Shown here: piece after piece, positions 24,037 through 61,978 of the stretch | How positions within the stretch are numbered: the stretch's first letter is position 1 | Layout of the letters: every line of letters begins with the position of its first letter | IMG/VR virus record: IMGVR_UViG_3300021964_000012 | Location: 1 to 64,000 of that record | Length of the DNA stretch: 64,000 bases | Direction: 5' to 3' (one strand) | Program-made: the position numbers and the translations under genes | The notes under the pieces: model-generated | Databases searched by the model: none | Told to the model about the DNA's origin: nothing | Seen by the model: the letters and a program-made list of their open reading frames with translations, nothing else

Positions 24037-24966
24037 ATGAACAAAACTGTTGACGTGGCTGATATAGATTGTGTATATTTAAGCTACGATGAACCCAAGA
24101 AAGAAGAATTTTGGGTAAAAATCCGCAACATAGTGCCATGGGCAAAACGTGTTGATGGAGTAAAAGGTTCAGACGCCGCACACAAAGCTGCCGCTGAAGC
24201 CAGTGATACAGAACGTTTTATATTGATTGATGGTGACAATCTACCTGAAGAAAATTTTTTCAACGAAACCTTAGAATACAAAACTGAACAATATGAACAT
24301 GCCGTATATAGATGGCGTGCCCGTAACGATATCAATGGATTGATGTACGGCAATGGTGGTATAAGCTCGTGGACAAAAACATTTGTACGTAACATGCGTA
24401 CACACGAAGCCTCAGAAGGTGCAGATGACACTGACGTTGAGTTTTGCTTTGATGATCTATATTGGCCAATGTACAACTGTTACTCAACTACATACCCCGG
24501 AGAAAGTGCAAAGCATGCTTTTCGTGCGGGCTTTAGAGAAGGCGTAAAAATGTGCCTTGATAGAGGTACAAAGCCTAGTGCAAGTGAATTCAAAGAACGT
24601 GTACACAACAGGAACTTGGACCATTTAACCATCTGGCACAATGTAGGCGCAGATACTGAACATGGATTGTGGGCAATTGCAGGATCAAGGTTAGGCACAT
24701 GGAAAACCATGCTCAGTGATTGGGATTACAAACAGGTGCAAGACTTTGCTTTACTTGAAGATATGTGGAATGATGTTAAACATATACCTCCTGGAGAACT
24801 TGTTACTATAAAGGCAGAAGATCTAGCAAGACAATTAGCACTTCCTATGAACATATATACTCCGATACAAAGTAAGTTTTTTAAACACCATTATAGAAGT
24901 AATTGGCACAACAAAACAATTATGACTCGCGAAATAGACATAATTAAACAACAAGAGGGTTGGTAA
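24037..24966 (+). CDS. GT-A-like glycosyltransferase
   Basis: DCVYLSYDEP..RVDGVKGSDAAHKAAA..FILIDGD; homologous to the C-terminal domain of 44248..46236. Confidence 0.65.
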   Translation: MNKTVDVADIDCVYLSYDEPKKEEFWVKIRNIVPWAKRVDGVKGSDAAHKAAAEASDTERFILIDGDNLPEENFFNETLEYKTEQYEHAVYRWRARNDINGLMYGNGGISSWTKTFVRNMRTHEASEGADDTDVEFCFDDLYWPMYNCYSTTYPGESAKHAFRAGFREGVKMCLDRGTKPSASEFKERVHNRNLDHLTIWHNVGADTEHGLWAIAGSRLGTWKTMLSDWDYKQVQDFALLEDMWNDVKHIPPGELVTIKAEDLARQLALPMNIYTPIQSKFFKHHYRSNWHNKTIMTREIDIIKQQEGW

Positions 24967-25503
24967 ATGCTAGAAGCAGTTAAATTAAATTATGATATAG
25001 ACATATTCACACGTGCAGATTATCAAGTACATAGTGGTAGCTGTATTAGTCATCAGGTACATGAATTGAAAGATATACACGAAAAATTTGGAGGCTTTCC
25101 AGATAGTTATGATATGGGTAATACTCTTATTAGACAACTATGGTGGACTAGAGAACAAGTAGACTTTGAAGAAATAGGAAAGCAATTGGGAATAGAGGTT
25201 GTAACGATAAGCAGTATTTTACAACCCCCAGGCAACATTATACCAGTACACCGAGATACATTCTTTCAAATTAAAAAAGCACATCCTGATGATACTAGAT
25301 TAAAAATAAGAGCAAATATATACTTGCAAGACTGGTCCATTGGTGAGTTTCTGCAATACGAAAAAGATAACGAATGGCATAATTCAACACATTGGAAAGC
25401 AGGCGAAGGTTGGATTTGGGATAGCGACCATTTACATCTAAGTGCTAATGCCGGAATGAGAGACAAATATACACTACAGGTAAGCGGTTTTTATATCAGA
25501 TGA
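24967..25503 (+). CDS. 2OG-Fe(II) oxygenase / cupin (Asp/Asn beta-hydroxylase-like)
   Basis: QPPGNIIPVHRD (HxD) ... WKAGEGWIWDSDHLHLSANAG (distal His). Confidence 0.7.
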   Translation: MLEAVKLNYDIDIFTRADYQVHSGSCISHQVHELKDIHEKFGGFPDSYDMGNTLIRQLWWTREQVDFEEIGKQLGIEVVTISSILQPPGNIIPVHRDTFFQIKKAHPDDTRLKIRANIYLQDWSIGEFLQYEKDNEWHNSTHWKAGEGWIWDSDHLHLSANAGMRDKYTLQVSGFYIR

Positions 25504-26510
25504 ATATTATTGTAAAAAGCAGTAATAACCATATCTGGAATCTTAATGAAATATATTCTAATATTGATACTGCTATGCTTCATAATCAAGATATTACTCT
25601 CGACTTAAACTACGAAGGTCCTGATATTTCGAATACTGAGCTCGAAAATTATATTATGCACTGTGCAAATTTACACAATTATAATCCATCAAGGATATCG
25701 GTACAAACTTCAAATCAAGTACAGAAACATGACGTTTTTAAAATTGATATACACTCGCCAATTTATATAAAAGAAATTGCAAAAGAATACGAACACACTT
25801 ATGACAAAGATATTATTAAACATTTTGGTATGTTTATAGGAAGAAGTAATGCACCAAGACTTGACTTAGCAAGTTACTTATATTATGCTGGATTTCGTGA
25901 TCAAAGTTATCTTACATACCATTATAATGTGCAAAGCCAATATCATAGAGAAAATATAGGTATTGAAGAATTGTTAATTGACTTTAACCACACAGATTTA
26001 GATATTCCGGCACTTTTTTTAAACAAATGTCCAATTGCAAGTGCTATAGTTGAGCCACAAACAAACATAGATTTATGTCATTGTCAACAGTTATTACAAA
26101 ACGATAATAAAAATTTCTTACAAAATTATCATAACTTTTTTGTTGAAATTGTTTGCGAAACCTGTTATACTGGTAATACGTTTTTCCCAACAGAAAAAAC
26201 TTGGCGACCAATATTACTTAAAACTCCTTTTATTATACAAGGACCACAATGGTACTTGCACAGATTAAAAGATATGGGTTTTAAAACATTCAGTGATTGG
26301 TGGGACGAAGGTTACAGCGAAGATCCTGCTTCTTGGCAACCTACAGAAATTAAAAAAGTTATAAGTTCTATTAGTGAACTAGGGATTACTAACTTACAAG
26401 AAATGTATAGAGAAATGCAGCCAGTACTTGAACATAATAAAAAAAGGTTTTTAGAACTTACGAGCAACGATTTTGACATATTTAAAAATGACAAATATCA
26501 AACAAAATAA
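25500..26510 (+). CDS. TEK-motif (GT10-like) putative glycosyltransferase 1
   Basis: VEIVCET..FPTEKTWRPI..PFIIQG..LKDMGFKTF..WWDEGY. Confidence 0.55.
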   Translation: MNIIVKSSNNHIWNLNEIYSNIDTAMLHNQDITLDLNYEGPDISNTELENYIMHCANLHNYNPSRISVQTSNQVQKHDVFKIDIHSPIYIKEIAKEYEHTYDKDIIKHFGMFIGRSNAPRLDLASYLYYAGFRDQSYLTYHYNVQSQYHRENIGIEELLIDFNHTDLDIPALFLNKCPIASAIVEPQTNIDLCHCQQLLQNDNKNFLQNYHNFFVEIVCETCYTGNTFFPTEKTWRPILLKTPFIIQGPQWYLHRLKDMGFKTFSDWWDEGYSEDPASWQPTEIKKVISSISELGITNLQEMYREMQPVLEHNKKRFLELTSNDFDIFKNDKYQTK

Positions 26511-27927
26511 AGGTGATGGTGTTGATGAGAACTTCAAAAGTGATTTCTTATCAGATGCAGAACGTGCTGAACAAAAGTTAAATACTGTATCACCAAGTTT
26601 TTGTTTAGCTAAATGGAAGCAACTTAGTTTGCATTTAACAACTGGTATGAATAATAGTTGTTATCATCCTCCATTGCATAGGGCAGATGCAAACGCAATC
26701 AGAGACAATCCTAGTGCATTGCATAACACAGAACACAAAAAACAACAACGTAAATTGATGTTGGAAGGTACGCGACCCACTGAGTGTAGTTACTGCTGGG
26801 CTATGGAAGACAATGGTAAACTCAGTGACAGACACTATCGTTCAGGTGAGCCTTGGGCAATTAAAGACTTTGAAACTATAAAAAATTCTTCATGGGATCA
26901 AGATATTACTCCTAGTTATGTTGAAGTAGATTTTAATAGTGCATGTAATCTCAGTTGCAGTTATTGTTCTCCCCAGTATAGTTCAACATGGATGAAAGAA
27001 ACACAACGTGAAGGTGCATGGCCAACATCAACACCACACAATGATCCTAGTCACTTTGTAGGAGAACGCAGGCCCATACCTGCAAGAGAACACAATCCAT
27101 ATGTAGAAGCATTTTGGGAGTGGTGGCCTACACTTTATCCAGAACTTGAACATTTTAGAATGACCGGTGGCGAACCAATGATGGATAAAAACACATATCG
27201 TGTTTTTGATTACGTGCTACAAAATCCTTCGCAAAAGTTACATTTAAGTACAACTTCAAATTTCAGTGTAGAAGAAAAACTTTGGCAACGTTACAAAGCA
27301 TATGTCACTATGCTTTGCGAAAGTCCAGGTACAGTTGAACATTTTATGCAATATGTGAGTCTGGACGGTATGTTTAAGCCAGCAGAATACATGCGTCATG
27401 GTTTAGATTTTAATTTGCTCTGGGATCGAGTAAATCAATTTTTGAACGACATACCAGAACGCAGTAGTATCACTTTTATAATTACTATGAATAATCTTAG
27501 TGTAACCACACTGAAGAATCTGTTTGCTGGTATACTTGGACTTAGGCAAATATACAGTAACACCTATCAACGTGTATGGTTTGATACACCTGTACTACGT
27601 ACACCTACCTGGCAGAGTTTGCAGTTATTGCCAGAAAGTTATGTATATGAACTTGAGCTTTGCAAGACGTGGATGAATGATCAATTAGAAAAACCTGAAA
27701 CACGTTTTAAAGGATTTAAAGATTACGAAGTTAACAGGCTAGACAGAGACATTGCTTGGATGCGTAACGGACAACATCTCGATCCTGTCTATATTAACAA
27801 AAACAAAGCAGACTTCTACAGGTTTTTTAACGAACACGATAGACGTAGAGGCACAGACTTTTTAAAAACTTTTCCTGAAATGTCATCTTGGTGGGAAGAG
27901 TGCAAATATTTGGCTAGTAAACAATAA
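26488..27927 (+). CDS. Radical SAM enzyme with N-terminal SPASM/twitch-like module (subfamily A)
   Basis: CLAKW..SCYHP..CSYCW; CNLSCSYC (CxxxCxxC); TGGEP; start at 26488 or 26473. Confidence 0.85.
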   Translation: MTNIKQNKGDGVDENFKSDFLSDAERAEQKLNTVSPSFCLAKWKQLSLHLTTGMNNSCYHPPLHRADANAIRDNPSALHNTEHKKQQRKLMLEGTRPTECSYCWAMEDNGKLSDRHYRSGEPWAIKDFETIKNSSWDQDITPSYVEVDFNSACNLSCSYCSPQYSSTWMKETQREGAWPTSTPHNDPSHFVGERRPIPAREHNPYVEAFWEWWPTLYPELEHFRMTGGEPMMDKNTYRVFDYVLQNPSQKLHLSTTSNFSVEEKLWQRYKAYVTMLCESPGTVEHFMQYVSLDGMFKPAEYMRHGLDFNLLWDRVNQFLNDIPERSSITFIITMNNLSVTTLKNLFAGILGLRQIYSNTYQRVWFDTPVLRTPTWQSLQLLPESYVYELELCKTWMNDQLEKPETRFKGFKDYEVNRLDRDIAWMRNGQHLDPVYINKNKADFYRFFNEHDRRRGTDFLKTFPEMSSWWEECKYLASKQ

Positions 27928-27942
27928 GCGATAACTACATTT

Positions 27943-28776
27943 ATGAAAGTTATAGTTACAGGATCCGGTGGTTTCTTAGGAAGCCACACAGTAAAATATT
28001 TCCGCAATAAAGGTCACGAAGTCACTGCATTTACACAAGATGTACGTCGTAACCTGCCTTACGAAAACTTTGATTGTTTGTGTCATTTTGCTGCCTATGT
28101 TGGTGGACGTAAAGGTATTGATAATAATAAATGGCTTATTACTGAAAATATAGAAATTGATAGAATTACATTTAGATGGGCTGAAGAATGGTGTAAGAAA
28201 ATAATCTATCCTAGCAGTTGTGCGGCCTATCCTCTGCACCTACAAGAAATGCCTGACACACCGATGCAAGAAGAACAGTTTGGAAGTAGTAAAACTTTTG
28301 ACATATACGGGCTTGCTAAAGTTGTTGCAGAAAGTATGCTTAAAACATTACACATTCCTGTACACGTCATGCGACCTTTTAGCATATACGGCCCTGGACA
28401 AGACTTGGATTATCCGATACCTGCAATAATACAAAGAGCAAAGAAAGGTGAGTGTAGTGTGTGGGGAAGTGGTACACAAACAAGAGACTGGGTTTACATA
28501 GATGATGCACTGAAAATATTTGAATACCTACTACACAAACAAGAATCTACTACAGTAAATATTGCAACAGGCAAAGCAATAACATTCAAAGAAATAGCAG
28601 AAACAGTATATAAGTTAATGCATGGTGTAAAAATTCCTGTGAAGACACAAACAGACCAACCCGAAGGTGCTGGACATAGGGTTGGTAGCACTGAGCGTAT
28701 GAGCAGTCTTGGGCTGAGATGTGATATACCAATTGAATACGGAATTAGAAAGATGATCGAATGGTCACAAGAATAG
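27943..28776 (+). CDS. NAD-dependent epimerase/dehydratase
   Basis: TGSGGFLG, YGLAK (YxxxK), YGPGQ, TRDWVYIDD; TAACTA 5 nt before ATG. Confidence 0.9.
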   Translation: MKVIVTGSGGFLGSHTVKYFRNKGHEVTAFTQDVRRNLPYENFDCLCHFAAYVGGRKGIDNNKWLITENIEIDRITFRWAEEWCKKIIYPSSCAAYPLHLQEMPDTPMQEEQFGSSKTFDIYGLAKVVAESMLKTLHIPVHVMRPFSIYGPGQDLDYPIPAIIQRAKKGECSVWGSGTQTRDWVYIDDALKIFEYLLHKQESTTVNIATGKAITFKEIAETVYKLMHGVKIPVKTQTDQPEGAGHRVGSTERMSSLGLRCDIPIEYGIRKMIEWSQE

Positions 28777-29819
28777 GCACACACTTTCCTTTAGATTGGG
28801 CTTATGGAAAAGATGAATTATATATCTTTGATAAAACGCACAGTCAAATTGATAAAAAGTTTCCAAATCAGCGTAACTTGTTAATTAATACCACATGGTT
28901 TGGCAGTCAATTTGGTGATAATAACGACTGCTGGACAGAAGCGATGAATTTAGAAGGTAAATTTACTAATCTATTTTTATTATGTATTATTGATCCAATA
29001 TATCTTTTTGAAGAAGATCTAGAAAAAATAATAAACAAGTACAATATTAAAAACATATATCGAATCGGAATGTTCGAAGGTGAAGCAATGGAATGGAACT
29101 TTCATGCACTTATTGCCAACGACCGCATGCCTGAATATAAGGAAGAAGAGGTATTAATGCAAAGTGCAGACTTTGCGTATATGCTATATCAAAGAAAACC
29201 AAGACTGCATCGAGTTGAAATTACCAATATTTTAAGAGAACAACCGCATCTGTTAGAACGTGGTATTGTTACATTAGGTGGAGTAGCAAAAGATGGAACA
29301 GATTGGCACCAAGGTCTTGAAGTTATTCCAATGACAATAGATGATCTACCGTCGGCATACAAGCAGACAGACGGAGATGATGACGATCATGCTGGAGTTC
29401 CAAATGATCTTGTAACAATTGGACGCCTTGATTTGTGGCAAAACCATTTTTTAAATGTGGTAAGCGAAACAGAATTTGACGAATGGAAACCTGTGTTTAT
29501 GACAGAAAAAATTTGGAAGCCAATGATAGGACTACGTCCGTTTCATGTGCATGGTAATCCAAGATCTTATCAATGGTTAAGAGACAGAGGATTTCGAACA
29601 TTTAATCATTATTGGAAACATTTGCCGGTTGAGACAATTACAGAAGAATACGGTCAACATAATGCACTAATGGATGTAATAAATTATCTAGTGGATATGC
29701 CAAGATTAGAAATAGAACAAATGTACCTTGACATGTTACCAGATTTGCGTTATAATAAAGCTCGCCTTAAAGAATTTAGTAAAGAACAAAAATATAAAAT
29801 GGAGAACTTGTTTGCCTAA
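28761..29819 (+). CDS. TEK-motif putative glycosyltransferase 2
   Basis: FLNVVSET..MTEKIWKPMIGLRPF..LRDRGFRTF. Confidence 0.55.
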   Translation: MVTRIGTHFPLDWAYGKDELYIFDKTHSQIDKKFPNQRNLLINTTWFGSQFGDNNDCWTEAMNLEGKFTNLFLLCIIDPIYLFEEDLEKIINKYNIKNIYRIGMFEGEAMEWNFHALIANDRMPEYKEEEVLMQSADFAYMLYQRKPRLHRVEITNILREQPHLLERGIVTLGGVAKDGTDWHQGLEVIPMTIDDLPSAYKQTDGDDDDHAGVPNDLVTIGRLDLWQNHFLNVVSETEFDEWKPVFMTEKIWKPMIGLRPFHVHGNPRSYQWLRDRGFRTFNHYWKHLPVETITEEYGQHNALMDVINYLVDMPRLEIEQMYLDMLPDLRYNKARLKEFSKEQKYKMENLFA

Positions 29820-31170
29820 GCAACCAAACGAGACTGATCTAGCATATAAAGAACGTGTACTTAATCCACTTAGTGATAGCATGTGTGGAGCCAAATGGTA
29901 TAATGCAACTATATGGTTAGGCTCAGGCATGACAACTAGTTGCCATCATCCACTTCCACATCATGTAAGTGTAGAGAATGTTATTGCTAATCCTAAGGCA
30001 CTACACAACACGCCACATAAAAAACATGAGCGTTTGCAGATGCAATATGGCGAGCGTCCAAAGGGTTGCGAGTATTGTTGGAAAGTAGAAGACATAGGCA
30101 GAGACAACATCAGTGATAGGGTTTACAAGAGTGTAATCTACGATGATGAAGCACTCAAACATGCCCATGAAACCGACCACAATGAGGACATAGACTTAAA
30201 AACACTAGAAATAGCATTTGATCGTACTTGTAACCTAGCATGCAGTTATTGTAATCCTGCTTTTAGCACCACATGGGTAAAAGATATAAAGAAGAACGGT
30301 GCATATCAAGGCCTCGTAAGCGATGGCCGCAATCATTTTACACATCCACATGATAGCTCGCAGTTGTATAGGTTCAACGAAACTAATCCTTACATCGAAG
30401 CGTTCTTTAAATGGTGGGAATCAGATCTGCACAGAACTTTACAAGAATTACGCATAACAGGTGGAGAACCAATGATGAGCGGACACCTGTGGAAACTATT
30501 AGACTGGTTCAAAGAAAACAAAGGCGCAAGTAAAACACGCATTGCTATCAACAGTAATCTACAGTGTAGCACAGATGATATAGAAAAACTACTTGATCGG
30601 GCTGATAGTGCTCCGCTGGACATTTATACAAGTAACGAAAGCATAGTAGATCAAGCAGAATACATACGTGATGGACTTGACTGGAACACATGGCAGACAA
30701 ACTTTGAAATGTTGGCCTCAAGCAATAAGTTACGTGGTTTGCACAACATGTGTACAATTAATGCATTGTGTTTGGAGTCATTGCCAGAATTTTTAGATTA
30801 TTTACTGAATATAAAAGCAAAATATGGCAGAGACTTTCCTAGTTTTACACTTAATATACTTCGATTTCCTAGTTTTCAAAGTGCATTAGCATTACCTGAC
30901 CAAATACGCTCGGCATACAAAGATCGATTACAACATTGGTTTGATCTCAATGTAGACAACAAACTATTTCATGAACATGAACTTAATCAAACACAACGTT
31001 TATTAGATTACTTAGATGTAGTTAAAACTCCGCACAGTGAAGCATTTGAGACACCAAAACTACACAACGACTTTGTAAAATTTTATACACAGTATGATAT
31101 CAGACGTAATAAAAATTTTAATAAAGTATTTCCAAGTATGAAAGAATGGTTTAATGAGTTACAACTATAA
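29812..31170 (+). CDS. Radical SAM enzyme, N-terminal SPASM/twitch (subfamily A)
   Basis: CGAKW..SCHHP..CEYCW; CNLACSYC; TGGEP; likely TTG start at 29812 with GGAG at 29801. Confidence 0.85.
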   Translation: MPKQPNETDLAYKERVLNPLSDSMCGAKWYNATIWLGSGMTTSCHHPLPHHVSVENVIANPKALHNTPHKKHERLQMQYGERPKGCEYCWKVEDIGRDNISDRVYKSVIYDDEALKHAHETDHNEDIDLKTLEIAFDRTCNLACSYCNPAFSTTWVKDIKKNGAYQGLVSDGRNHFTHPHDSSQLYRFNETNPYIEAFFKWWESDLHRTLQELRITGGEPMMSGHLWKLLDWFKENKGASKTRIAINSNLQCSTDDIEKLLDRADSAPLDIYTSNESIVDQAEYIRDGLDWNTWQTNFEMLASSNKLRGLHNMCTINALCLESLPEFLDYLLNIKAKYGRDFPSFTLNILRFPSFQSALALPDQIRSAYKDRLQHWFDLNVDNKLFHEHELNQTQRLLDYLDVVKTPHSEAFETPKLHNDFVKFYTQYDIRRNKNFNKVFPSMKEWFNELQL

Positions 31171-32437
31171 CAGTAGCGATCCAATAAAAATAAAACTAAG
31201 TGACTTAGAAGAACGTGAACGTTTCTTATTAAGTGAAAGCAAGACTTTTTGCATGTATCCATGGATACACTTACATGCATATCCAACTGGTGAAGCATAT
31301 CCTTGTTGTCATGCTGAAATGGGTGTAGGACAGGTAGGCAACTGCAAAACAAATACAATGTTAGAAATTTGGAATAGCCCTGAACAAAAGAAACTACGTC
31401 AAGATATGTTAACTGAAACCAAAAATGACGCATGCGGAAGATGCTATGAACAAGAAGCATCAGGATTCTTTTCAGGTAGACAAAGTGCAAACAAGCATCA
31501 TGGACACCACATACACAGAACACAAGACACAACTGTCGAGGGTGAGTATAAAGATTTTGAAATGACCTATTGGGATATACGTTTTTCAAACTTGTGTAAT
31601 CTAAGTTGTCGGAGTTGTGGACATATATTTTCTAGTAGTTGGCATAAAGACCAGACTGCTCTTGCTGGCCCCGAATGGGCAAAAAATAACAAGGTGTTAA
31701 ACTATGCAGGACGGTTTAAAACTGATATGATGGAACAGTTAATGGAGCATCTTGACTATGTAGAACAAATATACTTTGCTGGTGGTGAACCACTGATGAT
31801 GGATGAACACTATGTGATACTTGAAGAGCTTGAACGTAGAGGCCGTTTTGATGTGCGACTCATTTACAATACAAATTTTACGCATGTTCAACTTAAAGAA
31901 AGATTGGTTTTTGATTATTGGAAAAAGTTTGACAGTGTAGCAGTTGGTGCAAGTTTGGATGCAATGGGTCCTCGTGCTGAGTACATACGTAAAGGCGCCA
32001 AATGGGACATAGTTGAACAAAACAGACATAAAATGATGGAAATATGTCCAAAGGTTGACTTTTATATTTCACCAACACTTAGTATCATGAATGCCTTGCA
32101 CATACCAGACTTTCACAGAGACTGGGTAAACAAAGGATTGCTTCAAGCACAGGATCTAAACATCAATATATTACAAGATCCTAATTACTATAGAATTGAC
32201 ATTGCACCACAAGCGTACAAAGATCAAATCGTTGATGCGTATGAGAAACATCTTGTTTGGTTACGCCCACAAGATAAACTAAACAGAGCAACTGTTGGTT
32301 TTGAAAGTGCATTACAGTATTTAAAAACAGACAACACGCACTTGTTGGAAAAATTTTGGCAAAAGACTCAACAACTTGATGGCATTCGCAATGAAAATAT
32401 TCTTGACATTATACCAGAATTGGATGCATTAAAGTGA
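31154..32437 (+). CDS. Radical SAM enzyme, N-terminal SPASM/twitch (subfamily B)
   Basis: CMYPW..PCC..CGRC; CNLSCRSC; AGGEP. Confidence 0.9.
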   Translation: MSYNYNSSDPIKIKLSDLEERERFLLSESKTFCMYPWIHLHAYPTGEAYPCCHAEMGVGQVGNCKTNTMLEIWNSPEQKKLRQDMLTETKNDACGRCYEQEASGFFSGRQSANKHHGHHIHRTQDTTVEGEYKDFEMTYWDIRFSNLCNLSCRSCGHIFSSSWHKDQTALAGPEWAKNNKVLNYAGRFKTDMMEQLMEHLDYVEQIYFAGGEPLMMDEHYVILEELERRGRFDVRLIYNTNFTHVQLKERLVFDYWKKFDSVAVGASLDAMGPRAEYIRKGAKWDIVEQNRHKMMEICPKVDFYISPTLSIMNALHIPDFHRDWVNKGLLQAQDLNINILQDPNYYRIDIAPQAYKDQIVDAYEKHLVWLRPQDKLNRATVGFESALQYLKTDNTHLLEKFWQKTQQLDGIRNENILDIIPELDALK

Positions 32438-33639
32438 AGTTACCACATGAAAAGTTTTGTGTGTTGCCATGGGTAAGTTTAGAAACATCACCAATTGGAA
32501 CAGTCCGACCTTGTTGTCTAGCAGAAGATGAAATAACAGACAATAACGGCAAAAAATATAGTTTGCTTAATACCGACCTAAATAAAATACACAATAGTGA
32601 TTATATGCAAACATTGCGTAAAGAGTTTTTAGATGGCATTCAACCTGAAACTTGTCGTAAATGTTGGAACGAAGAACGCTCAGGTCGTACCTCAAAACGG
32701 ATGCACACACTTAACAGATTAGAACATATTGTTACAGACACCGAATGGACTGTTGATGCAAAACCCTTGGTGTTTATAGATTTTAAACTTGGCAACATAT
32801 GTAATTTAAAATGTAGAATATGTGGATCGTGGAGCTCGAGTACGTTTGCTGCTGAAGAAGTTAAATTTGAGGGTAAAGACAGCTTTCATTATCAAATGCT
32901 TAAAGATGGAGCATGGCCAAGACGCAATCAAAAGTTTTGGACAGAGATTGATAAACTAATGGAGCAAGTACAATACTTGGAGTTTACTGGTGGCGAACCA
33001 TTTATGATACAAGAACATTTTGATTTACTACAAAGAATGGTTGATCAAGGCATTGCATCAAATGTAGAAATACATTACAATACAAACGGAACACACTTTC
33101 CAGACCATGCAGAATCAATTTGGAAAAATTTTAAATTGGTTGAGATTGCTTTTAGCATAGACGATGTTGGTCCACGTTTTGAATATCAACGTGCAAATGC
33201 CGTATGGGATGAAGTAAATGCAAACATGGATAGATTTGAGGCTCTGCGTGATCGCAACACAAACATACAATTGCAAGTGTGTTCAACTGTGAATATTTTT
33301 AACGTTATGTACTTGGAAGGCTTGGCAAATTGGATTGACCAACGTAATTTTGATTTTATATACTGGAACATGCTACACGAAGCACGGCATCACAGTGTTG
33401 GTACTCTGCCTGACCGTGCAAAAGAGCTTGTATCTAATAAATTAATGTCTGCTAAGGTATCTAATTTTCATATGAAAGAGTTTGTCAAGATAGTAGATTT
33501 TATAGAAGCAGGTATCAGTTTAGATGGCACAGAACTACGTAGAAGTGTGCAACAGGTAGACCGTCGAAGATCACAGGATTTGCGTATACACCATCCAGAA
33601 CTCGCAGATGCAATAGATTACGAAGGACCAAACACATGA
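32434..33639 (+). CDS. Radical SAM enzyme, N-terminal SPASM/twitch (subfamily B)
   Basis: CVLPW..PCC..CRKC; CNLKCRIC; TGGEP; GTGA overlap start. Confidence 0.9.
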   Translation: MKLPHEKFCVLPWVSLETSPIGTVRPCCLAEDEITDNNGKKYSLLNTDLNKIHNSDYMQTLRKEFLDGIQPETCRKCWNEERSGRTSKRMHTLNRLEHIVTDTEWTVDAKPLVFIDFKLGNICNLKCRICGSWSSSTFAAEEVKFEGKDSFHYQMLKDGAWPRRNQKFWTEIDKLMEQVQYLEFTGGEPFMIQEHFDLLQRMVDQGIASNVEIHYNTNGTHFPDHAESIWKNFKLVEIAFSIDDVGPRFEYQRANAVWDEVNANMDRFEALRDRNTNIQLQVCSTVNIFNVMYLEGLANWIDQRNFDFIYWNMLHEARHHSVGTLPDRAKELVSNKLMSAKVSNFHMKEFVKIVDFIEAGISLDGTELRRSVQQVDRRRSQDLRIHHPELADAIDYEGPNT

Positions 33640-34202
33640 TATTAGTTGTCATAGCACTAGAAGAAGAATTACCAGGATCGTTACCAAGCGGATATAAAAA
33701 ATTAATCACAGGCGTAGGGAAAGTAAATGCAAGTATCGCACTTACTGCTGAGTTATGCCATAACAATCATTATACAAAAATTATAAACTACGGTTCAGCA
33801 GGCGGCAGTAAAGAAATTAAAGGCGAACTTGTAGGAGTAAGTGCAGTTATTGAACGTGATATGGATTGCACTCCTCTTGGCTTGCCATTGTATGTTTCAC
33901 CTGGCGATGAAGAACAAATGATAGTGTGTCAGACCAAACACGACAGTCTGTTTGTGTGCGGAACAGGAGACAGTTTTAGCGTGCCGCACATTAACTATCA
34001 AATATGCGAAATGGAAGCATACGCACTCGCAAAAGTTTGTCATAAATTCAATATTCCTTTTGACTGTTACAAGTACATTTCAGACAGTGACGCAGACGGT
34101 GAAGATCAAGGCCGTGAATGGGAAGCAAATGTTCACAAGGGTGCAGAACTGTTTAGAAGAACAATACTCACTGAACAAGAACAGATAGCATTTGAATGGT
34201 AG
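33636..34202 (+). CDS. mtnN: 5'-methylthioadenosine/S-adenosylhomocysteine nucleosidase
   Basis: ITGVGKVNA, INYGSAG, TGDSF, EMEAYALAKVC, KYISD motifs. Confidence 0.8.
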   Translation: MILVVIALEEELPGSLPSGYKKLITGVGKVNASIALTAELCHNNHYTKIINYGSAGGSKEIKGELVGVSAVIERDMDCTPLGLPLYVSPGDEEQMIVCQTKHDSLFVCGTGDSFSVPHINYQICEMEAYALAKVCHKFNIPFDCYKYISDSDADGEDQGREWEANVHKGAELFRRTILTEQEQIAFEW

Positions 34203-35506
34203 ACAGGCCTGAACAAAAGCCTGAAACCTTATGCATGGCTCCGTGGACACACACCTATCTATCTCCGCAGACCGAACGCAGAATGTGTTGTGCTAGTCGT
34301 GAATCAGCACAGAGCTTTAAACAGTATATTGATACTGGATCGGGCACAGGAACATACAATCCGCAAACACTAGAAGAACATTGGAACGGCGATCATATGC
34401 GTAGTGTAAGAAGGCGTATGATGGCTGGTGAAAAACTAAGCGAGTGCGAAGTTTGTACAGATAAACTTCTTAATACTGATGTGTATAGAACTTACTTTTG
34501 GCACTTGTTTCAACACCGTTATGATGAGCTATGGACCAGTACCGACGACACTGGTTGGACCTCAATGAAGCCAATCAGTTGGGACTATAGATTTTCAAAC
34601 TTGTGTAACTTTAAATGTCGTACCTGTGGTGATATGCTTAGTTCAAGTTGGGAAACAGAACAACGTAAACACAACATGGTTAATTTAGACAACCCAAAAA
34701 ACAACTGGATGCGGCCAGAGGTTCGTAAAGAAATAAGCAAATTTCAGGATACACAAATTGAAAAAGAGTTTTCAGATGCAGTTGAAGAACATAGAATTGA
34801 AGAAATCTATTGGGTAGGTGGCGAACCACTGATGTATGAACAACACTGGCGATACATGAAACGCATAGTCGAACTTGGCGATGGGCCTGGATTGTATGCA
34901 CGTTATAATAGCAATCTTAGTAGAGTGAATTATAAAGGTCAAAATCTCTATAAAGATATACTTGCTAATATACGTGATTGGCAGATATGTGCCAGTATTG
35001 ATGGCACAGGTGCTATTGGTGAATATATAAGAACTGGACTAAACTATGATCAATTTGTAGATAATTTTAAACAAGGTTGTGATATCGCAACGCACAGACG
35101 GCAAATGCGTTTAGACTTTACTCTTACACTACCTGGATTGTTTGAAGTTGTACACATGCAACAATTAGCCGATAGATTAGGTGTTGACATCCTTGCTAAA
35201 GTTATTTTTACATTTACGCCAGATATTATTATGTCACCACTTGCATTGCCTCGTAAATTATTAGATCGCATGGTCAACCAACTAATTAACAATAATGTAT
35301 TAGGAACTGCATTGCAAGACGTGCTTGTCCAACTTAAAAATAGACCAACGATGGAAGAACAGTTTCCTGATTACATACAAGGTATGCAAGAAGGAAAAAG
35401 GCGTGTACTCAAATTAGAAGAGATTAGAAATGATAAGTTTACTATGAAAGATATACTCAGCAAAGATCAAGAAGTGTTAGATTGGTGGAATAGCATTGAT
35501 GCTTGA
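34196..35506 (+). CDS. Radical SAM enzyme, N-terminal SPASM/twitch (subfamily B)
   Basis: CMAPW..MCC..CEVC; CNFKCRTC; VGGEP. Confidence 0.9.
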   Translation: MVDRPEQKPETLCMAPWTHTYLSPQTERRMCCASRESAQSFKQYIDTGSGTGTYNPQTLEEHWNGDHMRSVRRRMMAGEKLSECEVCTDKLLNTDVYRTYFWHLFQHRYDELWTSTDDTGWTSMKPISWDYRFSNLCNFKCRTCGDMLSSSWETEQRKHNMVNLDNPKNNWMRPEVRKEISKFQDTQIEKEFSDAVEEHRIEEIYWVGGEPLMYEQHWRYMKRIVELGDGPGLYARYNSNLSRVNYKGQNLYKDILANIRDWQICASIDGTGAIGEYIRTGLNYDQFVDNFKQGCDIATHRRQMRLDFTLTLPGLFEVVHMQQLADRLGVDILAKVIFTFTPDIIMSPLALPRKLLDRMVNQLINNNVLGTALQDVLVQLKNRPTMEEQFPDYIQGMQEGKRRVLKLEEIRNDKFTMKDILSKDQEVLDWWNSIDA

Positions 35507-36554
35507 TCGGGTTGAAATGCAATTGCGTGGGCCAAATGGTTTGTTGCCTGTATTCTTTGATGTGTATGATAATAGTTTAAGTCGTAAATGGTTAACTGCA
35601 TTTAATAATTTACTGGATAATAAATTACATCTTGAAAAAAACTATTGCTTTTTTGGATTTCCTGACAATGAACGTAACTTAGACTTTTTAGCCAGTGAAA
35701 TCAATAGAACTATTGCAGGGATAAATGGCAGCAACATTGACTATGTTATAAAAGATTATTTTTCTGCTGAAAATATGGTTGAAAAAAATTGGAGTGAACT
35801 TAACCAAGCAGTGAAAATTGATATAAATCATACAAAATTCAACCAGTTGCATTTATACTTTGAGGAAACACAAGGTGTGAGTGGTGCAATGAGCGAACAT
35901 TATACTAATGCTGATGCAGAAACACGTTGGTATATCAGGCAACTTAATTTATTATGTCATGAAGCAGAATGTCTTATAATAAGTTTAGGAAGAAAAGATG
36001 CGGCTCCGGAATGGATACGTCCTAGTAATGTTATGTGTTGGTTGCATGCTCCAAGATTTGTACTAGATGCTGAAGATTATAATCAATTTGGAGTTGACAC
36101 AATAGCAAGAGATCACGGTGGTGTATACGTTGGTGTTAACAAAGCAGTAGGAAAACATCATTATGAGGTTTTTAGCGACGAAGGCAGAGACAGTAGAATT
36201 GACGAGCTTACAACCACCACACTTAAACCACAAACAGAAGCTGCAGGTGATTTTGACATAGAATGGGGTAAAGCAACTTCTGACCAAAGTTTTATGCAAA
36301 CAAAACTAAATGATTTTAGAACATGGCTCAAGGCAAACAATTTTGATCCAGATGACCCTAGTTTGACAATAGGTCATCCAAAAATTGGACAGGTTGATTT
36401 AAAACACAGTTTTGGCACAGAGGATTTTTTGCAAGTGTTAGCAAAATTATCACAATATCTTGATGTATACAGTATCAAAACCAGTAAAAGTTATTGCGAA
36501 TACGATTACACATGGCATCAAAGTAAAGAACTACAAATACCTTTAATTGATTGA
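35496..36554 (+). CDS. Hypothetical protein (HLYFE / LCHEAE possible metal ligands)
   Basis: 352-aa ORF coupled to the rSAM gene; no family recognised. Confidence 0.6.
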   Translation: MMLDRVEMQLRGPNGLLPVFFDVYDNSLSRKWLTAFNNLLDNKLHLEKNYCFFGFPDNERNLDFLASEINRTIAGINGSNIDYVIKDYFSAENMVEKNWSELNQAVKIDINHTKFNQLHLYFEETQGVSGAMSEHYTNADAETRWYIRQLNLLCHEAECLIISLGRKDAAPEWIRPSNVMCWLHAPRFVLDAEDYNQFGVDTIARDHGGVYVGVNKAVGKHHYEVFSDEGRDSRIDELTTTTLKPQTEAAGDFDIEWGKATSDQSFMQTKLNDFRTWLKANNFDPDDPSLTIGHPKIGQVDLKHSFGTEDFLQVLAKLSQYLDVYSIKTSKSYCEYDYTWHQSKELQIPLID

Positions 36555-36579
36555 CAACTACACTAAAGGAGTGTATAAT
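36551..36579 (+). promoter_or_regulatory. Consensus sigma70 promoter TTGACA-17-TATAAT upstream of metK
   Basis: TTGACA 36551-36556, TATAAT 36574-36579; overlaps a stop and a start codon. Confidence 0.55.
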
Positions 36580-36682
36580 GATAAAATGGTTCAAGAATCT
36601 TATCAGCAAAATAAAACTAGAAATAAGATATCGTAAAAAATTAAAAGAACTGAGGAAAAGGGATCCTTTTATATACAAATGA
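36578..36682 (+). CDS. Small basic protein, 34 aa (MIKWFK..RYRKKLKELRKRDPFIYK)
   Basis: AAGGAG SD; ATGA overlap with metK; below the ORF-track cutoff. Confidence 0.7.
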   Translation: MIKWFKNLISKIKLEIRYRKKLKELRKRDPFIYK

Positions 36683-37779
36683 GTTATATTTTCACATCAG
36701 AGTCAGTGAGCAAAGGCCATCCTGACAAAATAGCAGACCAAATATCAGATGCATTAGTCGATGCTGGTTTGCAAGCCGGTGACGAAACAACACGTGTTGC
36801 AGTTGAAACAATGGTAACAACAAATTATGTTGTACTAGCAGGAGAAGTAAAAAACTTCAACGTCACTGATGAACAAGTTGAGCAGATTATTAGAGACAAA
36901 GTTAAAGAGATCGGCTATGAGCAAGAAGGCTTTCATTGGGATAAACTTAAAGTTGATAACAAAACAATCAACAACCAGTTGCACTCTCAAAGTTCAGACA
37001 TTGCTCTAGGTACAGATGATTTTGGTGCAGGTGATCAAGGTATTATGTTTGGATATGCTTGCAATGACAATGAAGCAATGATGCCAGCACCTATCTATTA
37101 TTCACACGAACTACTAAAAGAACTAAATGACATGCGAGCAGATGGTTATCATTTTTTGCTACCAGATGCAAAGAGTCAAGTTAGTGTTGAATATGAAGGC
37201 GGAAAAGTAAAACGTATTGATCAAGTTGTTATAAGTCATCAACACAAAGAAGGTTTTCAACATAGTGTTATAGCACCTTTCAAAACCGCAGTAGAAAAAG
37301 TACTAGGCAATTTAATAGATGACAATACAGTATTTCATTTTAATCCTACTGGCAAATTTGTTATTGGTGGACCCGATGGTGACACTGGACTTACTGGTCG
37401 TAAAATTATTGTTGATACCTATGGTGGTTTTGCTCCTCACGGTGGTGGGGCATTTAGTGGAAAAGATCCTACTAAGGTAGACCGTAGTGCGGCCTATATG
37501 GCTCGTTGGTTGGCAAAGAATGTAGTTGCAGACGATATGGCTGACTGGTGTCAAATACAATTAAGTTATGCTATTGGCGTAAAAGAACCTACCAGCATCT
37601 ATGTAGATTCAAATGGACACAACAGAAGTATACAAAAGTTTATCAGAGACAATATTGATCTTACGCCAAAAGGTATAATTGATAGATTTGATCTTTTTAA
37701 ATTTTATGAATACAGTGCAAATTGCACATACGGACACTTTGGCAACAAAGATGTTCCTTGGGAAAAGGTAGGCTGGTAA
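36679..37779 (+). CDS. metK: S-adenosylmethionine synthetase
   Basis: FTSESVSKGHPDKIADQISD, GAGDQGIMFGYA, GGGAFSGKDPTKVDRSAAY. Confidence 0.97.
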   Translation: MSYIFTSESVSKGHPDKIADQISDALVDAGLQAGDETTRVAVETMVTTNYVVLAGEVKNFNVTDEQVEQIIRDKVKEIGYEQEGFHWDKLKVDNKTINNQLHSQSSDIALGTDDFGAGDQGIMFGYACNDNEAMMPAPIYYSHELLKELNDMRADGYHFLLPDAKSQVSVEYEGGKVKRIDQVVISHQHKEGFQHSVIAPFKTAVEKVLGNLIDDNTVFHFNPTGKFVIGGPDGDTGLTGRKIIVDTYGGFAPHGGGAFSGKDPTKVDRSAAYMARWLAKNVVADDMADWCQIQLSYAIGVKEPTSIYVDSNGHNRSIQKFIRDNIDLTPKGIIDRFDLFKFYEYSANCTYGHFGNKDVPWEKVGW

Positions 37780-39395: not shown

Positions 39396-40228
39396 AACAC
39401 ACACGAACAAGATATCATCGAAACTTTGCCTATTGGAAAAATGACGAAGTTATTGGAAAAAATCTTAGAGAGTATGGCGAATATCAGCAAAAAGAAATTG
39501 ATCTATTAGTTGGTTTATTAAACAGTGTAAATAGCAAACAAAAAGTGGTTTGGGACATTGGTGCCAACATAGGAGTTCATACTATGGCATTTTCTAAACA
39601 TAGTACTTTTGTTTGCAGTTGGGAAGCAAATCCACAAAACTTCAAACTACTACAAATGAATACACAAGGAAAACTTGCTCCAAATGTAAAAGTACACAAT
39701 GTTGCTATTAGCAATGGTAAAAAAGACACAATACAAATACAAGACTTTGATCAGTCTAAGTCTAGTAACAAAGGTGAATTATCAATTGTAGAAAAAGGTG
39801 GAGTAGAAATTTCAGCAAGAAGCATCGACAGTTATATGATGAATTATCCTCTTCCTAGTTTGATAAAAATTGATGTAGAAGGTCATGAACTTGAAGTACT
39901 GCAAGGTGCACTTGTAATGCTAAAAACAGTAAAACCAATATTGTATTTTGAAACTGCTGATAAAGTGAGTTATGCAGAACATATAACATTTCTTAAAGAT
40001 CTTGAATATCGCATGTGGTGGTTTGCATGTCCTAATTTTAATAAAAATAATTATAATAAAAATGACAATAATACCTGGGGTAGAAGTGTTATCTGTAGTA
40101 TACTCGCAATACACAAGGATGTGGTTGGATTAAATACTATAGAATTGCAAGAAGTAATTGATGCCGACGATCATTGGTTAAAGATGGATTGGGATTACGA
40201 TACAGGACTTACAAGAGCAATAGAATGA
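39386..40228 (+). CDS. FkbM-family SAM-dependent methyltransferase
   Basis: WDIGANIGVHT, LIKIDVEGHELEVLQGA. Confidence 0.88.
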   Translation: MQLEHTRTRYHRNFAYWKNDEVIGKNLREYGEYQQKEIDLLVGLLNSVNSKQKVVWDIGANIGVHTMAFSKHSTFVCSWEANPQNFKLLQMNTQGKLAPNVKVHNVAISNGKKDTIQIQDFDQSKSSNKGELSIVEKGGVEISARSIDSYMMNYPLPSLIKIDVEGHELEVLQGALVMLKTVKPILYFETADKVSYAEHITFLKDLEYRMWWFACPNFNKNNYNKNDNNTWGRSVICSILAIHKDVVGLNTIELQEVIDADDHWLKMDWDYDTGLTRAIE

Positions 40229-61884: not shown

Positions 61885-61902
61885 AGTGTACTTAGTAAAA
61901 AA

Positions 61903-61978
<76 letters not shown>

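What the first reader, a model, noticed from the sequence alone, without database searches (positions are those of the whole stretch)
26488..35506. Five near-tandem radical SAM enzymes with a permuted, N-terminal SPASM/twitch module
Seen: each has a Cys module (C..PW..G...CC..C..C in three; C.AKW..SC.HP..C.YCW in two) before the CxxxCxxC core and GGEP. Known: SPASM/twitch modules normally follow the rSAM barrel (anSME, MoaA, BtrN). The two subfamilies differ by CC versus SCxH, a possible His ligand. No precursor peptide with clear RiPP features was seen. Inference: sequential radical chemistry (oxidation, epimerisation, deoxygenation or C-C coupling) on sugars.
Basis: partly seen in the sequence, partly recalled or inferred. 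Interest (0 to 1): 0.82.

Follow-up and report, generated by a model that had tools for sequence, protein, structure and literature searches.

The report
Phage array of N-terminal-twitch radical SAM enzymes
A marine giant phage carries five old, individually conserved copies of a radical SAM enzyme family whose extra iron-sulfur domain sits in front of the catalytic barrel; databases already name the family, but nobody knows what it does, and here it lies among probable sugar-modifying genes.

Summary
Five genes (R1 26488-27927, R2 29812-31170, R3 31154-32437, R4 32434-33639, R5 34196-35506) encode radical SAM proteins. In each, a four-Cys module precedes the CxxxCxxC motif and GGEP.

The architecture is not new. 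All five score 283-405 bits against NCBIfam NF033640, "N_Twi_rSAM, twitch domain-containing radical SAM protein" (cutoff 170). The only solved-structure match of the N-terminal module is the BtrN twitch domain, Cys for Cys. It is therefore a one-cluster twitch domain, not a SPASM domain, and no His ligand is needed.

The window is a marine/estuarine jumbo myovirus. The five genes are ancient paralogs: each has its own orthologs in related phage contigs, with dN/dS of 0.04-0.13. Arrays of 2-8 copies occur in all 80 IMG/VR loci examined.

Recurrent partners are a NodU-type carbamoyltransferase, a possibly GT-B-like protein family and two families of unknown function. This lineage adds MetK, an MTA/5'-dA-nucleosidase-like gene, a DUF59 Fe-S assembly protein, an FkbM methyltransferase, two SDR enzymes and a DegT aminotransferase.

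Glycan tailoring is the best reading, but it rests on context only (about 0.5). No member of the family has a known function. Verdict: new members of a known, uncharacterised family; interest 0.5.

The parts
24037..24966 (+). 309-aa protein of an unnamed viral family (o24037 family). It is the commonest partner of these rSAM arrays. It contains an IDGDN (DxD-like) motif. Function unknown.
   Evidence: Homologs precede the array in L003, L007 and L009 and occur in 63 of 80 IMG/VR array loci. More than 8000 homologs exist, all 'hypothetical', none with a Pfam domain. No Pfam, NCBIfam or PDB hit.
25500..26510 (+). Possible GT-B-like glycosyltransferase, paralog 1 of 4 (TEK...P motif).
   Evidence: Paralogous to 28761-29819, 42313-43200(-) and 43191-44249(-). 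AF2 model has pLDDT 66. Top PDB fold hits are GT-B enzymes (MshA, OtsA, POGLUT1) but weak, E 4e-3 and above. An hhalign comparison with GT4 was negative. The family occurs in 56 of 80 viral array loci.
26488..27927 (+). R1, N-terminal-twitch radical SAM enzyme (SC.H subfamily).
   Evidence: NF033640: 299 bits, E 4.9e-89. Orthologs in L003 (93%), L007, L008 and L009 form a clade with 100/100 support. dN/dS 0.04.
27943..28776 (+). NAD-dependent sugar epimerase/reductase (short-chain dehydrogenase/reductase, SDR).
   Evidence: PF01370, E 2.2e-31. phrog_540 'nucleotide-sugar epimerase', E 1.5e-49.
28761..29819 (+). Possible GT-B-like protein, paralog 2.
29728..29756 (+). Perfect sigma-70 consensus promoter (TTGACA-17-TATAAT) upstream of R2.
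   Evidence: One of only two perfect matches in the 64-kb window; 0.15 expected by chance.
29812..31170 (+). R2, N-terminal-twitch radical SAM enzyme (SC.H subfamily). The start is revised to the TTG at 29812.
   Evidence: NF033640: 296.5 bits. Start inferred from the L003 ortholog. 51% identical to a protein of Ralstonia phage RsoM2USA that lies two genes from a carbamoyltransferase.
31154..32437 (+). R3, N-terminal-twitch radical SAM enzyme (CC subfamily). It is the best match to the family model.
   Evidence: NF033640: 405 bits, E 3.2e-121. SPASM Pfam match at residues 33-98. AF2 model: pLDDT 95, pTM 0.92. No close solved structure; TMq 0.37 or lower.
32434..33639 (+). R4, N-terminal-twitch radical SAM enzyme (CC subfamily).
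   Evidence: NF033640: 342 bits. PF04055: 42 bits, above the Pfam cutoff.
33636..34202 (+). Short nucleosidase of the MTA/SAH (5'-deoxyadenosine) nucleosidase type. Its inferred role is removal of the 5'-dA by-product.
   Evidence: PF01048: 50.8 bits. NF004168 'nucleosidase': E 9e-23, but 81 bits against a cutoff of 129. Conserved in L003 at 86% identity.
34196..35506 (+). R5, N-terminal-twitch radical SAM enzyme (CC subfamily, long branch).
   Evidence: NF033640: 283 bits. The orthogroup has 100/100 support.
35496..36554 (+). 352-aa protein of unknown function (o35496 family). It always directly follows the last rSAM gene.
   Evidence: Orthologs in L003, L007, L008 and L009 and in 39 of 80 viral loci. 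dN/dS 0.06. No Pfam, NCBIfam, PHROG, PDB or Atlas lead.
36551..36579 (+). Perfect sigma-70 consensus promoter upstream of metK.
   Evidence: Both hexamers are conserved in L003, L004 and L005 while the spacer differs.
36679..37779 (+). S-adenosylmethionine synthetase (MetK).
   Evidence: PF00438, PF02772 and PF02773, E 4e-31 to 6e-58. 94% identical to the L003 ortholog.
37890..39395 (+). NodU/CmcH-type O-carbamoyltransferase.
   Evidence: PF02543 and PF16861. NodU model E 3.6e-43, below its cutoff. It co-occurs with N-twitch rSAMs in 11 of the first 85 loci, including Ralstonia phage and Bacteroidota operons, and in 41 of 80 viral loci.
39386..40228 (+). FkbM-family methyltransferase.
   Evidence: PF05050, E 3.6e-17.
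40174..40539 (+). DUF59 / PaaD-like Fe-S cluster assembly protein.
   Evidence: PF01883, E 9.8e-16. Also present at the end of the cassette in L003 and L009.
42313..44249 (-). Two further paralogs of the possible GT-B-like family (42313-43200 and 43191-44249).
46166..48257 (-). DegT-type sugar aminotransferase (46166-47260) and an NDP-sugar 4,6-dehydratase/epimerase-like SDR (47214-48257).
   Evidence: PF01041, E 1e-53; PF01370 and PF16363, E 4e-45 and 2e-38.

Best explanation
The five genes are functional, non-redundant paralogs of the N-terminal-twitch radical SAM family (NCBIfam NF033640).

Inferred mechanism. Each protein binds the SAM-cleaving [4Fe-4S] cluster at CxxxCxxC. It binds one auxiliary [4Fe-4S] cluster in an N-terminal, BtrN-like twitch domain through four conserved Cys. 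Because that cluster would be fully Cys-ligated, it most likely relays an electron, as in BtrN, and does not bind substrate, as the MoaA cluster does. Each enzyme would make a 5'-deoxyadenosyl radical, abstract a hydrogen atom from a C-H bond, and resolve the substrate radical by oxidation, epimerisation, deoxygenation or C-C bond formation.

Context. The five genes form the core of a gene cassette widespread in marine jumbo phages. In this phage the cassette also holds four possible GT-B-like transferases, two SDR sugar enzymes, a DegT aminotransferase, a NodU-type O-carbamoyltransferase and an FkbM methyltransferase. The most likely job is therefore stepwise radical tailoring of sugars in a phage-specified glycoconjugate.

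Support genes. This lineage adds its own MetK (SAM supply), an MTA/5'-dA-type nucleosidase (by-product removal) and a DUF59 Fe-S assembly protein (cluster loading).

Shown versus inferred. Shown: family membership, domain order, Cys conservation, paralog age, purifying selection and gene linkage. Inferred: cluster stoichiometry, the electron-relay role, a sugar substrate, and the roles of the support genes.
For: Family and domain architecture:
- NF033640 hits for all five genes, 283-405 bits against a cutoff of 170.
- A SPASM Pfam match lies N-terminal to the Radical_SAM match.
- A profile of the N-terminal module hits only the BtrN twitch domain in the PDB (E 3e-4), aligned with C169, C187, C232 and C235 (weaker version).
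- The Cys are invariant across paralogs and across 60 homologs.
- The AF2 model is confident: pLDDT 95.

Ancient, retained paralogs:
- Each of R1-R5 has its own orthogroup with 100% support in the window, L003, L007, L008 and L009.
- Orthologs are 77-93% identical; paralogs are 21-32% identical.
- dN/dS is 0.04-0.13.

Cassette:
- All 80 IMG/VR loci carry 2-8 copies.
- Partner families in those loci: o24037 family 63/80, GT-like family 56/80, carbamoyltransferase 41/80, o35496 family 39/80.

Glycan link:
- Neighbouring SDR, DegT, carbamoyltransferase and FkbM genes.
- A natural GT2-rSAM fusion protein, P0238.
- GT2 is the commonest Pfam family among 99 neighbours in 18 bacterial loci.
- A Bacteroidota operon reads rSAM, carbamoyltransferase, a weak GDSL-like match (below the Pfam cutoff), UbiA, GT4, epimerase.
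- The GT-like model's best fold hits are GT-B enzymes.

Support genes; all are conserved in L003.

Expression and occurrence:
- A perfect sigma-70 promoter lies upstream of metK and is conserved in L003.
- Short contigs identical to the window occur in two metatranscriptome runs (weak).
Against: - No member of NF033640 has a known substrate, and nothing was found in the literature searched.
- The glycosyltransferase assignment of the partner family is weak: pLDDT 66, fold-search E 4e-3 or worse, no profile hit to the PDB or to GT4.
- Three conserved partners (o24037, o35496, GT-like) have no demonstrated function.
- Six of ten fusion proteins examined carry TPR or Sel1 repeats, which fits protein substrates at least as well.
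- In bacteria only a minority of neighbours are glycan genes: GT2 is 7 of 99.
- MetK, the nucleosidase and the Fe-S protein are within 10 kb of the array in at most 1 of 80 other viral loci. The support module is therefore lineage-specific, not part of the core.
- The nucleosidase scores below its NCBIfam cutoff.
- Cluster content and activity are untested.
Confidence: 0.5

Rival explanations
1. The enzymes modify proteins rather than sugars. Targets could be virion proteins such as the adjacent 4490-aa fibre-like protein, or host proteins. The chemistry could be epimerisation, cross-linking or C-H functionalisation of residues. The sugar genes would then act on the same glycoprotein or be unrelated neighbours.
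For: - Relatives are often fused to TPR or Sel1 protein-interaction repeats: 6 of 10 fusions. An Elusimicrobia MAG holds many such fusions.
- The cassette lies on the same strand directly downstream of baseplate and fibre genes.
- The closest structural neighbours include anSME, SkfB, CteB and SuiB, which act on peptides or proteins.
- POGLUT1, a protein O-glucosyltransferase, is the most probable fold hit of the GT-like partner.
Against: - No RRE/PqqD domain and no adjacent precursor gene; the genes overlap or abut.
- There is no Sulfatase or peptidase/exporter signal among the 25 commonest Pfam families of the bacterial neighbours.
- TPR domains are also common on glycosyltransferases (general knowledge).
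- Structural similarity to the peptide enzymes is confined to the generic barrel, TMq 0.31-0.37.
- The array is linked to a carbamoyltransferase and to sugar enzymes in independent lineages.
Confidence: 0.2
2. The cassette makes or tailors a small molecule or lipid-linked compound rather than a surface or virion glycan. Examples would be an aminoglycoside- or nucleoside-like secondary metabolite, or a glycolipid. Each rSAM would perform one tailoring step.
For: - Characterised sugar-acting twitch rSAMs such as BtrN and BlsE work in antibiotic pathways. BlsE and BtrN are among the PDB sequence hits.
- NodU/CmcH-type carbamoyltransferases are typical of such pathways (established knowledge of TobZ, NovN and CmcH).
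- A UbiA prenyltransferase and a weak GDSL-like match lie next to the bacterial rSAM-carbamoyltransferase pair.
- PhyH dioxygenases and ketosynthases occur among bacterial neighbours.
Against: - No core scaffold-forming enzyme (cyclase, NRPS or PKS) was found among the cassette genes that have a family match; several cassette genes remain unassigned.
- Up to four transferase-like paralogs suggest oligomer assembly.
- This would be unusual for a lytic jumbo phage.
Confidence: 0.12
3. The enzymes act on nucleotides or on phage DNA, either for viperin-like nucleotide chemistry or for DNA hypermodification. The transferase-like proteins would then decorate bases.
For: - Weak matches to viperin models and structures.
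- ThyX lies at the edge of the island.
- The DNA glucosyltransferases of T-even phages are GT-B enzymes (general knowledge).
Against: - Viperin model scores are 18-37 bits against a cutoff of 180 and cover only the generic core.
- No hydroxymethylase, kinase or other known DNA-hypermodification gene was seen in the window.
- Bacterial relatives sit with envelope-glycan genes.
Confidence: 0.06

Closest known systems
NCBIfam NF033640, N_Twi_rSAM (twitch domain-containing radical SAM protein)
   Same: All five proteins match full length, well above the curated cutoff. They share the domain order (twitch, then barrel, then a helical C-terminal region) and the same conserved Cys.
   Different: Nothing structural differs. 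The family is only a 'subfamily' model without an assigned function. What is added here is the viral setting: 5-6 ancient paralogs per genome and their fixed partners.
BtrN (2-deoxy-scyllo-inosamine dehydrogenase), the prototype twitch-domain rSAM
   Same: The N-terminal module aligns with BtrN residues 163-239, including the positions of C169, C187, C232 and C235, with similar spacing. It is a one-cluster, four-Cys auxiliary site. BtrN acts on a carbohydrate-type substrate.
   Different: In BtrN the twitch domain follows the barrel; here it precedes it. These proteins are about 150 residues longer, with a family-specific helical C-terminal domain. Overall fold similarity to solved rSAMs is low, TMq 0.37 or less. 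The substrate is unknown.
SPASM-domain rSAMs (anSME, PqqE, sactipeptide synthases)
   Same: The Pfam SPASM model (PF13186) matches the module end to end in R3-R5. The barrels are the closest solved folds.
   Different: Only four conserved Cys and no CX2CX5CX3C seven-Cys motif, so one auxiliary cluster rather than two. The module is N-terminal. There is no RRE domain, no precursor peptide and no sulfatase neighbour.
Marine T4-like environmental viral genomes rich in rSAM and Fe-S helper genes (Nishimura et al. 2017, PMC5332604)
   Same: A marine T4-like phage genome was reported with 12 radical SAM genes plus an A-type Fe-S carrier (ATC), grx and paaD (DUF59-type) Fe-S helper genes. The authors suggested that the helper genes serve the virus's own Fe-S proteins. 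The window shows the same theme: six rSAMs and a DUF59 protein.
   Different: In the passages read here, that paper treats the rSAMs only as superfamily members. The N-terminal twitch family, the array structure, the orthogroups, the carbamoyltransferase and other partners, and the MetK plus nucleosidase genes are described here.

Membership tests
NF033640 N_Twi_rSAM | Whole-protein score above the curated cutoff of 170 bits, with a full-length match | tested here: met
   Scores for R1-R5 are 299, 296.5, 405, 342 and 283 bits. Model coverage is about 1-398 of 398 positions.
NF033640 N_Twi_rSAM | A twitch-type Cys module lies N-terminal to the CxxxCxxC core | tested here: met
   PF13186 matches at residues 33-98, 9-78 and 13-88, ahead of PF04055. 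Four module Cys are invariant.
Radical SAM superfamily | CxxxCxxC cluster motif and GGE-type SAM-binding motif | tested here: met
   C158, C162, C165 and G232-G-E-P235 are invariant. PF04055 hits all five, but only R4 exceeds the gathering score of 29.5 bits.
Radical SAM superfamily | Reductive cleavage of SAM to the 5'-deoxyadenosyl radical | not testable with these tools
   Requires anaerobic reconstitution and a 5'-dA assay.
Twitch domain (BtrN type) | One auxiliary [4Fe-4S] site formed by C...C...CxxC, homologous to the BtrN twitch domain | tested here: met
   The profile of the N-terminal module hits only BtrN in the PDB (E 3e-4), with the Cys columns aligned to C169, C187 (one column off the invariant Cys), C232 and C235. 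Actual cluster binding was not tested.
Twitch domain (BtrN type) | The domain follows the partial TIM barrel | tested here: not met
   The domain precedes the barrel in all five proteins and in 60 homologs. This is the feature that defines the separate N_Twi family.
SPASM domain | A seven-Cys motif (CX9-15GX4C ... CX2CX5CX3C ... C) binding two auxiliary clusters | tested here: not met
   Only four Cys are conserved, and no Cys follows the CxxC at +5 or +3.
anSME-like sulfatase maturases | A C-terminal SPASM domain and association with sulfatase genes | tested here: not met
   The domain order is opposite. No sulfatase is seen in the window, and none is among the top 25 Pfam families of the bacterial neighbours.
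RiPP rSAM maturases | An RRE/PqqD domain and an adjacent precursor-peptide gene | tested here: not met
   No PqqD/RRE hit. Gaps inside the array run from -23 to +15 nt once the R2 start is corrected, and the only larger gaps (110-124 nt) flank metK. Remote precursor genes cannot be excluded.
Viperin / MoaA / QueE | Score above the equivalog cutoff | tested here: not met
   Scores are 18-37 bits against cutoffs of 180-284 bits.

The most novel reading that the evidence does not exclude
The array and its fixed partners form a self-contained viral pathway of five to six different radical reactions. The partners are the o24037 family, the o35496 family, the GT-like family and the carbamoyltransferase. 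The pathway would build a so-far-undescribed, heavily tailored sugar or glycoprotein modification, possibly on the virion fibres of marine jumbo phages. It would use a structurally new rSAM class (twitch domain first), kept running in oxic seawater hosts by phage-supplied SAM synthesis, 5'-dA removal and Fe-S loading. If so, NF033640 would hold several new rSAM reaction types.
Probability: 0.25. Interest if true: 0.8.

Novelty: new member of a known kind. Interest (0 to 1): 0.5.

Why it matters
NF033640 is large. A phmmer search with R3 found 10,108 clusters at 50% identity with E of 0.001 or better, and 1,454 with E of 1e-30 or better. No biochemical or structural study of the family turned up in the literature searched.

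Marine and estuarine jumbo phages keep 2-8 diverged copies side by side under strong purifying selection. This suggests a multi-step radical pathway that matters to the virus.

This phage also brings its own SAM synthetase, a by-product nucleosidase and an Fe-S helper protein. That makes it a compact, clonable test bed:
- for assigning the first functions in the family;
- for asking why the auxiliary domain can sit on either side of the barrel;
- for finding what glycan or other product abundant ocean phages make.

Near-identical sequence is present in metagenomes from at least 14 studies.

Tried and rejected
- Megablast of the 10-kb region against GenBank phages found no match. tblastn found only distant relatives: Vibrio phages K566/K567 and Ralstonia phage RsoM2USA.
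- Searches for 'N-terminal twitch', 'N-terminal SPASM' and 'twitch domain-containing radical SAM', plus phage, carbamoyltransferase and polysaccharide combinations, found no functional study.
- PDB fold search with the R3 model gave only generic barrel similarity. The BFVD search gave unannotated phage rSAMs, including a phage KVP40 protein.
- The search for related loci with the five-paralog alignment failed because no conserved stretch was found. It was redone with a 60-sequence alignment.
- For the o35496 family, Pfam, NCBIfam, PHROGs, the ESM Atlas (best score 0.61, which is noise) and a PDB profile search gave nothing.
- For the o24037 family, nothing was found.
- For the GT-like family, PDB profile searches returned only chance RpoD hits or nothing. 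hhalign against GT4 was negative. The Atlas lead to GT10 scored 0.80, which is a lead only. The GT-B reading rests on weak fold hits and on a TEK motif that I recall from alpha-1,3-fucosyltransferases; that recollection was not tested.
- The contexts of fusion proteins P0238 and P0202 were on contigs too short to inform.
- The His-ligand hypothesis is rejected, because four Cys are invariant.
- The SPASM (two-cluster) reading is rejected.
- The idea of a universal MetK, nucleosidase and Fe-S support module is rejected. These genes are near the array in at most 1 of 80 other viral loci.
- The T4 late-promoter motif TATAAATA is absent from the window, so timing of expression could not be read from it.

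Full report
**1. What is there**

Between 24 kb and 40.5 kb the + strand carries a tightly packed gene block. Gaps run from -23 to +15 nt, apart from two gaps of 110-124 nt around metK.

Five ORFs encode radical SAM proteins:
- R1, 26488-27927
- R2, 29812-31170 (the mechanical ORF starts at 29728)
- R3, 31154-32437
- R4, 32434-33639
- R5, 34196-35506

All five have CxxxCxxC and GGEP. All have an upstream module with four invariant Cys, at C44, C63, C105 and C108 in R1 numbering.

**2. The domain order is already a named family**

All five match NCBIfam NF033640, "N_Twi_rSAM, twitch domain-containing radical SAM protein". They match end to end at 283-405 bits against a cutoff of 170.

Pfam places its SPASM model (positions 1-67 of 67) at the N-terminus of R3, R4 and R5, before the Radical_SAM match.

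I built a profile from 25 N-terminal modules. In the whole PDB it hits only the BtrN twitch domain (E 3e-4). The alignment pairs the module's C, C and CxxC with BtrN C169, C187 and C232/C235 (a weaker version appears).

Only four Cys are conserved, and the CX5CX3C part of a SPASM domain is missing. I therefore read the module as a single-cluster twitch domain. The second Cys of the CC / SC pair is invariant in both subfamilies, so a His ligand is not needed.

**3. Structure**

AlphaFold2 on a 60-sequence alignment gives a confident model of R3 (pLDDT 95, pTM 0.92).

The best solved-structure matches share only the barrel, at TMq 0.31-0.37. They are anSME, SkfB, GDGT-MAS, viperin and MoaA. No member of this family appears to have a solved structure.

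In BFVD the close matches are unannotated phage rSAMs.

**4. Origin**

The window is a jumbo myovirus.
- It has a gp25-like baseplate protein and a 1135-aa baseplate wedge protein. The wedge protein is 33-35% identical to those of Atu_ph07, Rak2-like and related 350-490-kb phages.
- It has a 4490-aa ORF and three tRNAs.
- Near-identical DNA occurs in estuary, marine and sediment metagenomes from many studies.
- Syntenic Tara contigs (L003-L005) conserve the whole block.

**5. Paralogs are old and individually kept**

Paralogs are 21-32% identical to one another. Orthologs in L003 are 77-93% identical.

In a maximum-likelihood tree, each of R1-R5 forms its own orthogroup across the window, L003, L007, L008 and L009, with 100/97 to 100/100 support. 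R1, R2 and a sixth type present in L003 and L009 form a deep clade with 100/100 support.

dN/dS between the window and L003 is 0.04-0.13. dS is saturated, so these values are approximate. Five different functions, or five different steps, is the simplest reading.

**6. Family size and distribution**

- A phmmer search with R3 finds 10,108 clusters at 50% identity with E of 0.001 or better, and 1,454 with E of 1e-30 or better.
- Relatives occur in Bacteroidota, Bdellovibrionota, Elusimicrobiota, Myxococcota, Paenibacillus and others, often as a single copy.
- In IMG/VR at least 582 loci encode relatives. All 80 of the best loci have arrays of 2-8 copies, most often 5-6.
- Natural fusions include rSAM-rSAM tandems, TPR or Sel1 repeats (6 of the 10 examined) and one GT2 glycosyltransferase.

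**7. Partners**

In the 80 viral loci the arrays co-occur with:
- the o24037 family (63/80);
- the o25500-type "GT-like" family (56/80);
- a NodU/CmcH carbamoyltransferase (41/80);
- the o35496 family (39/80).

The carbamoyltransferase link recurs in independent lineages:
- In Ralstonia phage RsoM2USA an R2 ortholog (51% identical) lies two genes away from one.
- In two Bacteroidota MAGs the rSAM stop codon overlaps the carbamoyltransferase start. A weak GDSL-like match (below the Pfam cutoff), a UbiA prenyltransferase, a GT4 glycosyltransferase and an epimerase follow.

Among 99 neighbours in 18 single-copy bacterial loci, GT2 is the commonest Pfam family (7). PhyH (5) and TPR (4) come next.

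The GT-like family gives a mediocre model (pLDDT 66). Its best fold hits are all GT-B transferases, but they are weak. Profile searches do not confirm the assignment.

**8. This lineage's extras**

- An MTA/SAH-nucleosidase-like gene lies inside the array at 33636-34202.
- MetK lies at 36679-37779.
- An FkbM methyltransferase and a DUF59/PaaD-type Fe-S assembly protein follow.
- On the other strand lie a DegT aminotransferase and a 4,6-dehydratase-like SDR.

From established enzymology (my own knowledge, not tested here), MtnN-type nucleosidases hydrolyse 5'-deoxyadenosine and relieve product inhibition of rSAM enzymes. MetK regenerates SAM.

These genes are conserved in L003. They are within 10 kb of the array in at most 1 of 80 other viral loci. 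They are therefore a lineage-specific add-on.

Nishimura et al. 2017 had already noted a marine T4-like genome with 12 rSAM genes plus ATC, grx and paaD. They proposed that viral Fe-S helper genes serve viral Fe-S proteins (PMC5332604).

**9. Expression hints**

The only two perfect TTGACA-N17-TATAAT sites in the 64-kb window lie on the coding strand, one upstream of R2 and one upstream of metK. Chance expectation is 0.15, and 2 of 100 shuffles reach two matches.

The site upstream of metK keeps both hexamers in L003 while its spacer differs.

Two metatranscriptome runs hold short contigs identical to R3, R4 and the R5/o35496 junction. DNA carry-over cannot be excluded.

**10. Interpretation**

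Family membership and the architecture are secure.

The mechanism is inferred: radical initiation at the CxxxCxxC cluster, and electron relay through a fully Cys-ligated twitch cluster as in BtrN.

A sugar or glycoconjugate substrate is the best-supported class, at about 0.5. The support is gene context in the phage, the GT2 fusion, the bacterial neighbourhoods and the carbamoyltransferase link.

A protein substrate remains a serious rival, at about 0.2. It is favoured by the TPR fusions and by the position next to fibre genes.

Small-molecule or lipid products (about 0.12) and nucleotide or DNA chemistry (about 0.06) are less likely.

**11. Verdict**

The permuted order defines a curated family, and rSAM-rich marine T4-like phages are already on record.

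What remains interesting is that the family is large and wholly uncharacterised. It is organised in conserved multi-paralog viral cassettes with fixed unknown partners. This phage offers a compact, self-supporting version to work on.

Noticed in passing
window 60928-61917 (-): A sixth radical SAM gene (329 aa) has the ordinary domain order. CxxxCxxC lies near the N-terminus and a Cys-rich C...C...C...CxxC stretch lies at the C-terminus. It is not an NF033640 member (20 bits) and no specific family could be assigned. A phage KVP40 rSAM of the same length appears among the structural relatives of R3.
   Followed up: partly
window 4933-18405 (+): A 4490-aa ORF directly follows the baseplate wedge gene. 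The ortholog in L003 is 4524 aa, with a faint FG-GAP hit. It is presumably a giant fibre or baseplate-attached protein.
   Followed up: no
whole window: The T4 late-promoter core TATAAATA is entirely absent from both strands, against 7.3 +/- 2.7 expected from shuffles. The only two perfect sigma-70 consensus promoters both lie inside the rSAM cassette.
   Followed up: partly
window 50443-51705 (-) and 52863-53957 (-): A DUF2201 metallopeptidase/VWA-like protein lies near a MoxR-like AAA ATPase, a recurrent pairing. PHROGs labels the first 'HNH endonuclease', which Pfam does not support.
   Followed up: no
L007, L008 (NZ_JBBAKG01, 'Haliscomenobacter' MAG) and L009 (PBLX01, 'Legionellales' MAG): These MAG contigs (183, 148 and 43 kb) carry the same rSAM cassette, in synteny with the window, including the upstream phage genes. 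They look like jumbo-phage contigs binned into bacterial MAGs. Their taxon labels should not be read as hosts.
   Followed up: partly
L020-L051 (CAIRTQ01, Elusimicrobia MAG MJ-2014_bin-0981): One MAG supplies 13 of the 79 best bacterial loci. Many hold tandem genes of 650-1050 aa that fuse TPR repeats to the N-twitch rSAM domain. This is a striking lineage-specific expansion.
   Followed up: no
L003 10001-11659 and many representatives (P0121, P0126-P0146): The R3 ortholog in many relatives has an extra N-terminal domain of about 125-140 aa with no Pfam match. That domain is missing in the window's R3.
   Followed up: no
L001 (Vibrio phage K566) 14959-21701: A cultured 255-kb Vibrio phage has four very divergent N-twitch rSAM genes. 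They are interleaved with hypothetical proteins and lie close to a PagP-annotated lipid A acyltransferase gene and NAD-salvage genes.
   Followed up: no
window 44248-46236 (+): The C-terminal half of this 662-aa protein is a paralog of the o24037 family protein that heads the array (25% identity, E 1e-9).
   Followed up: no
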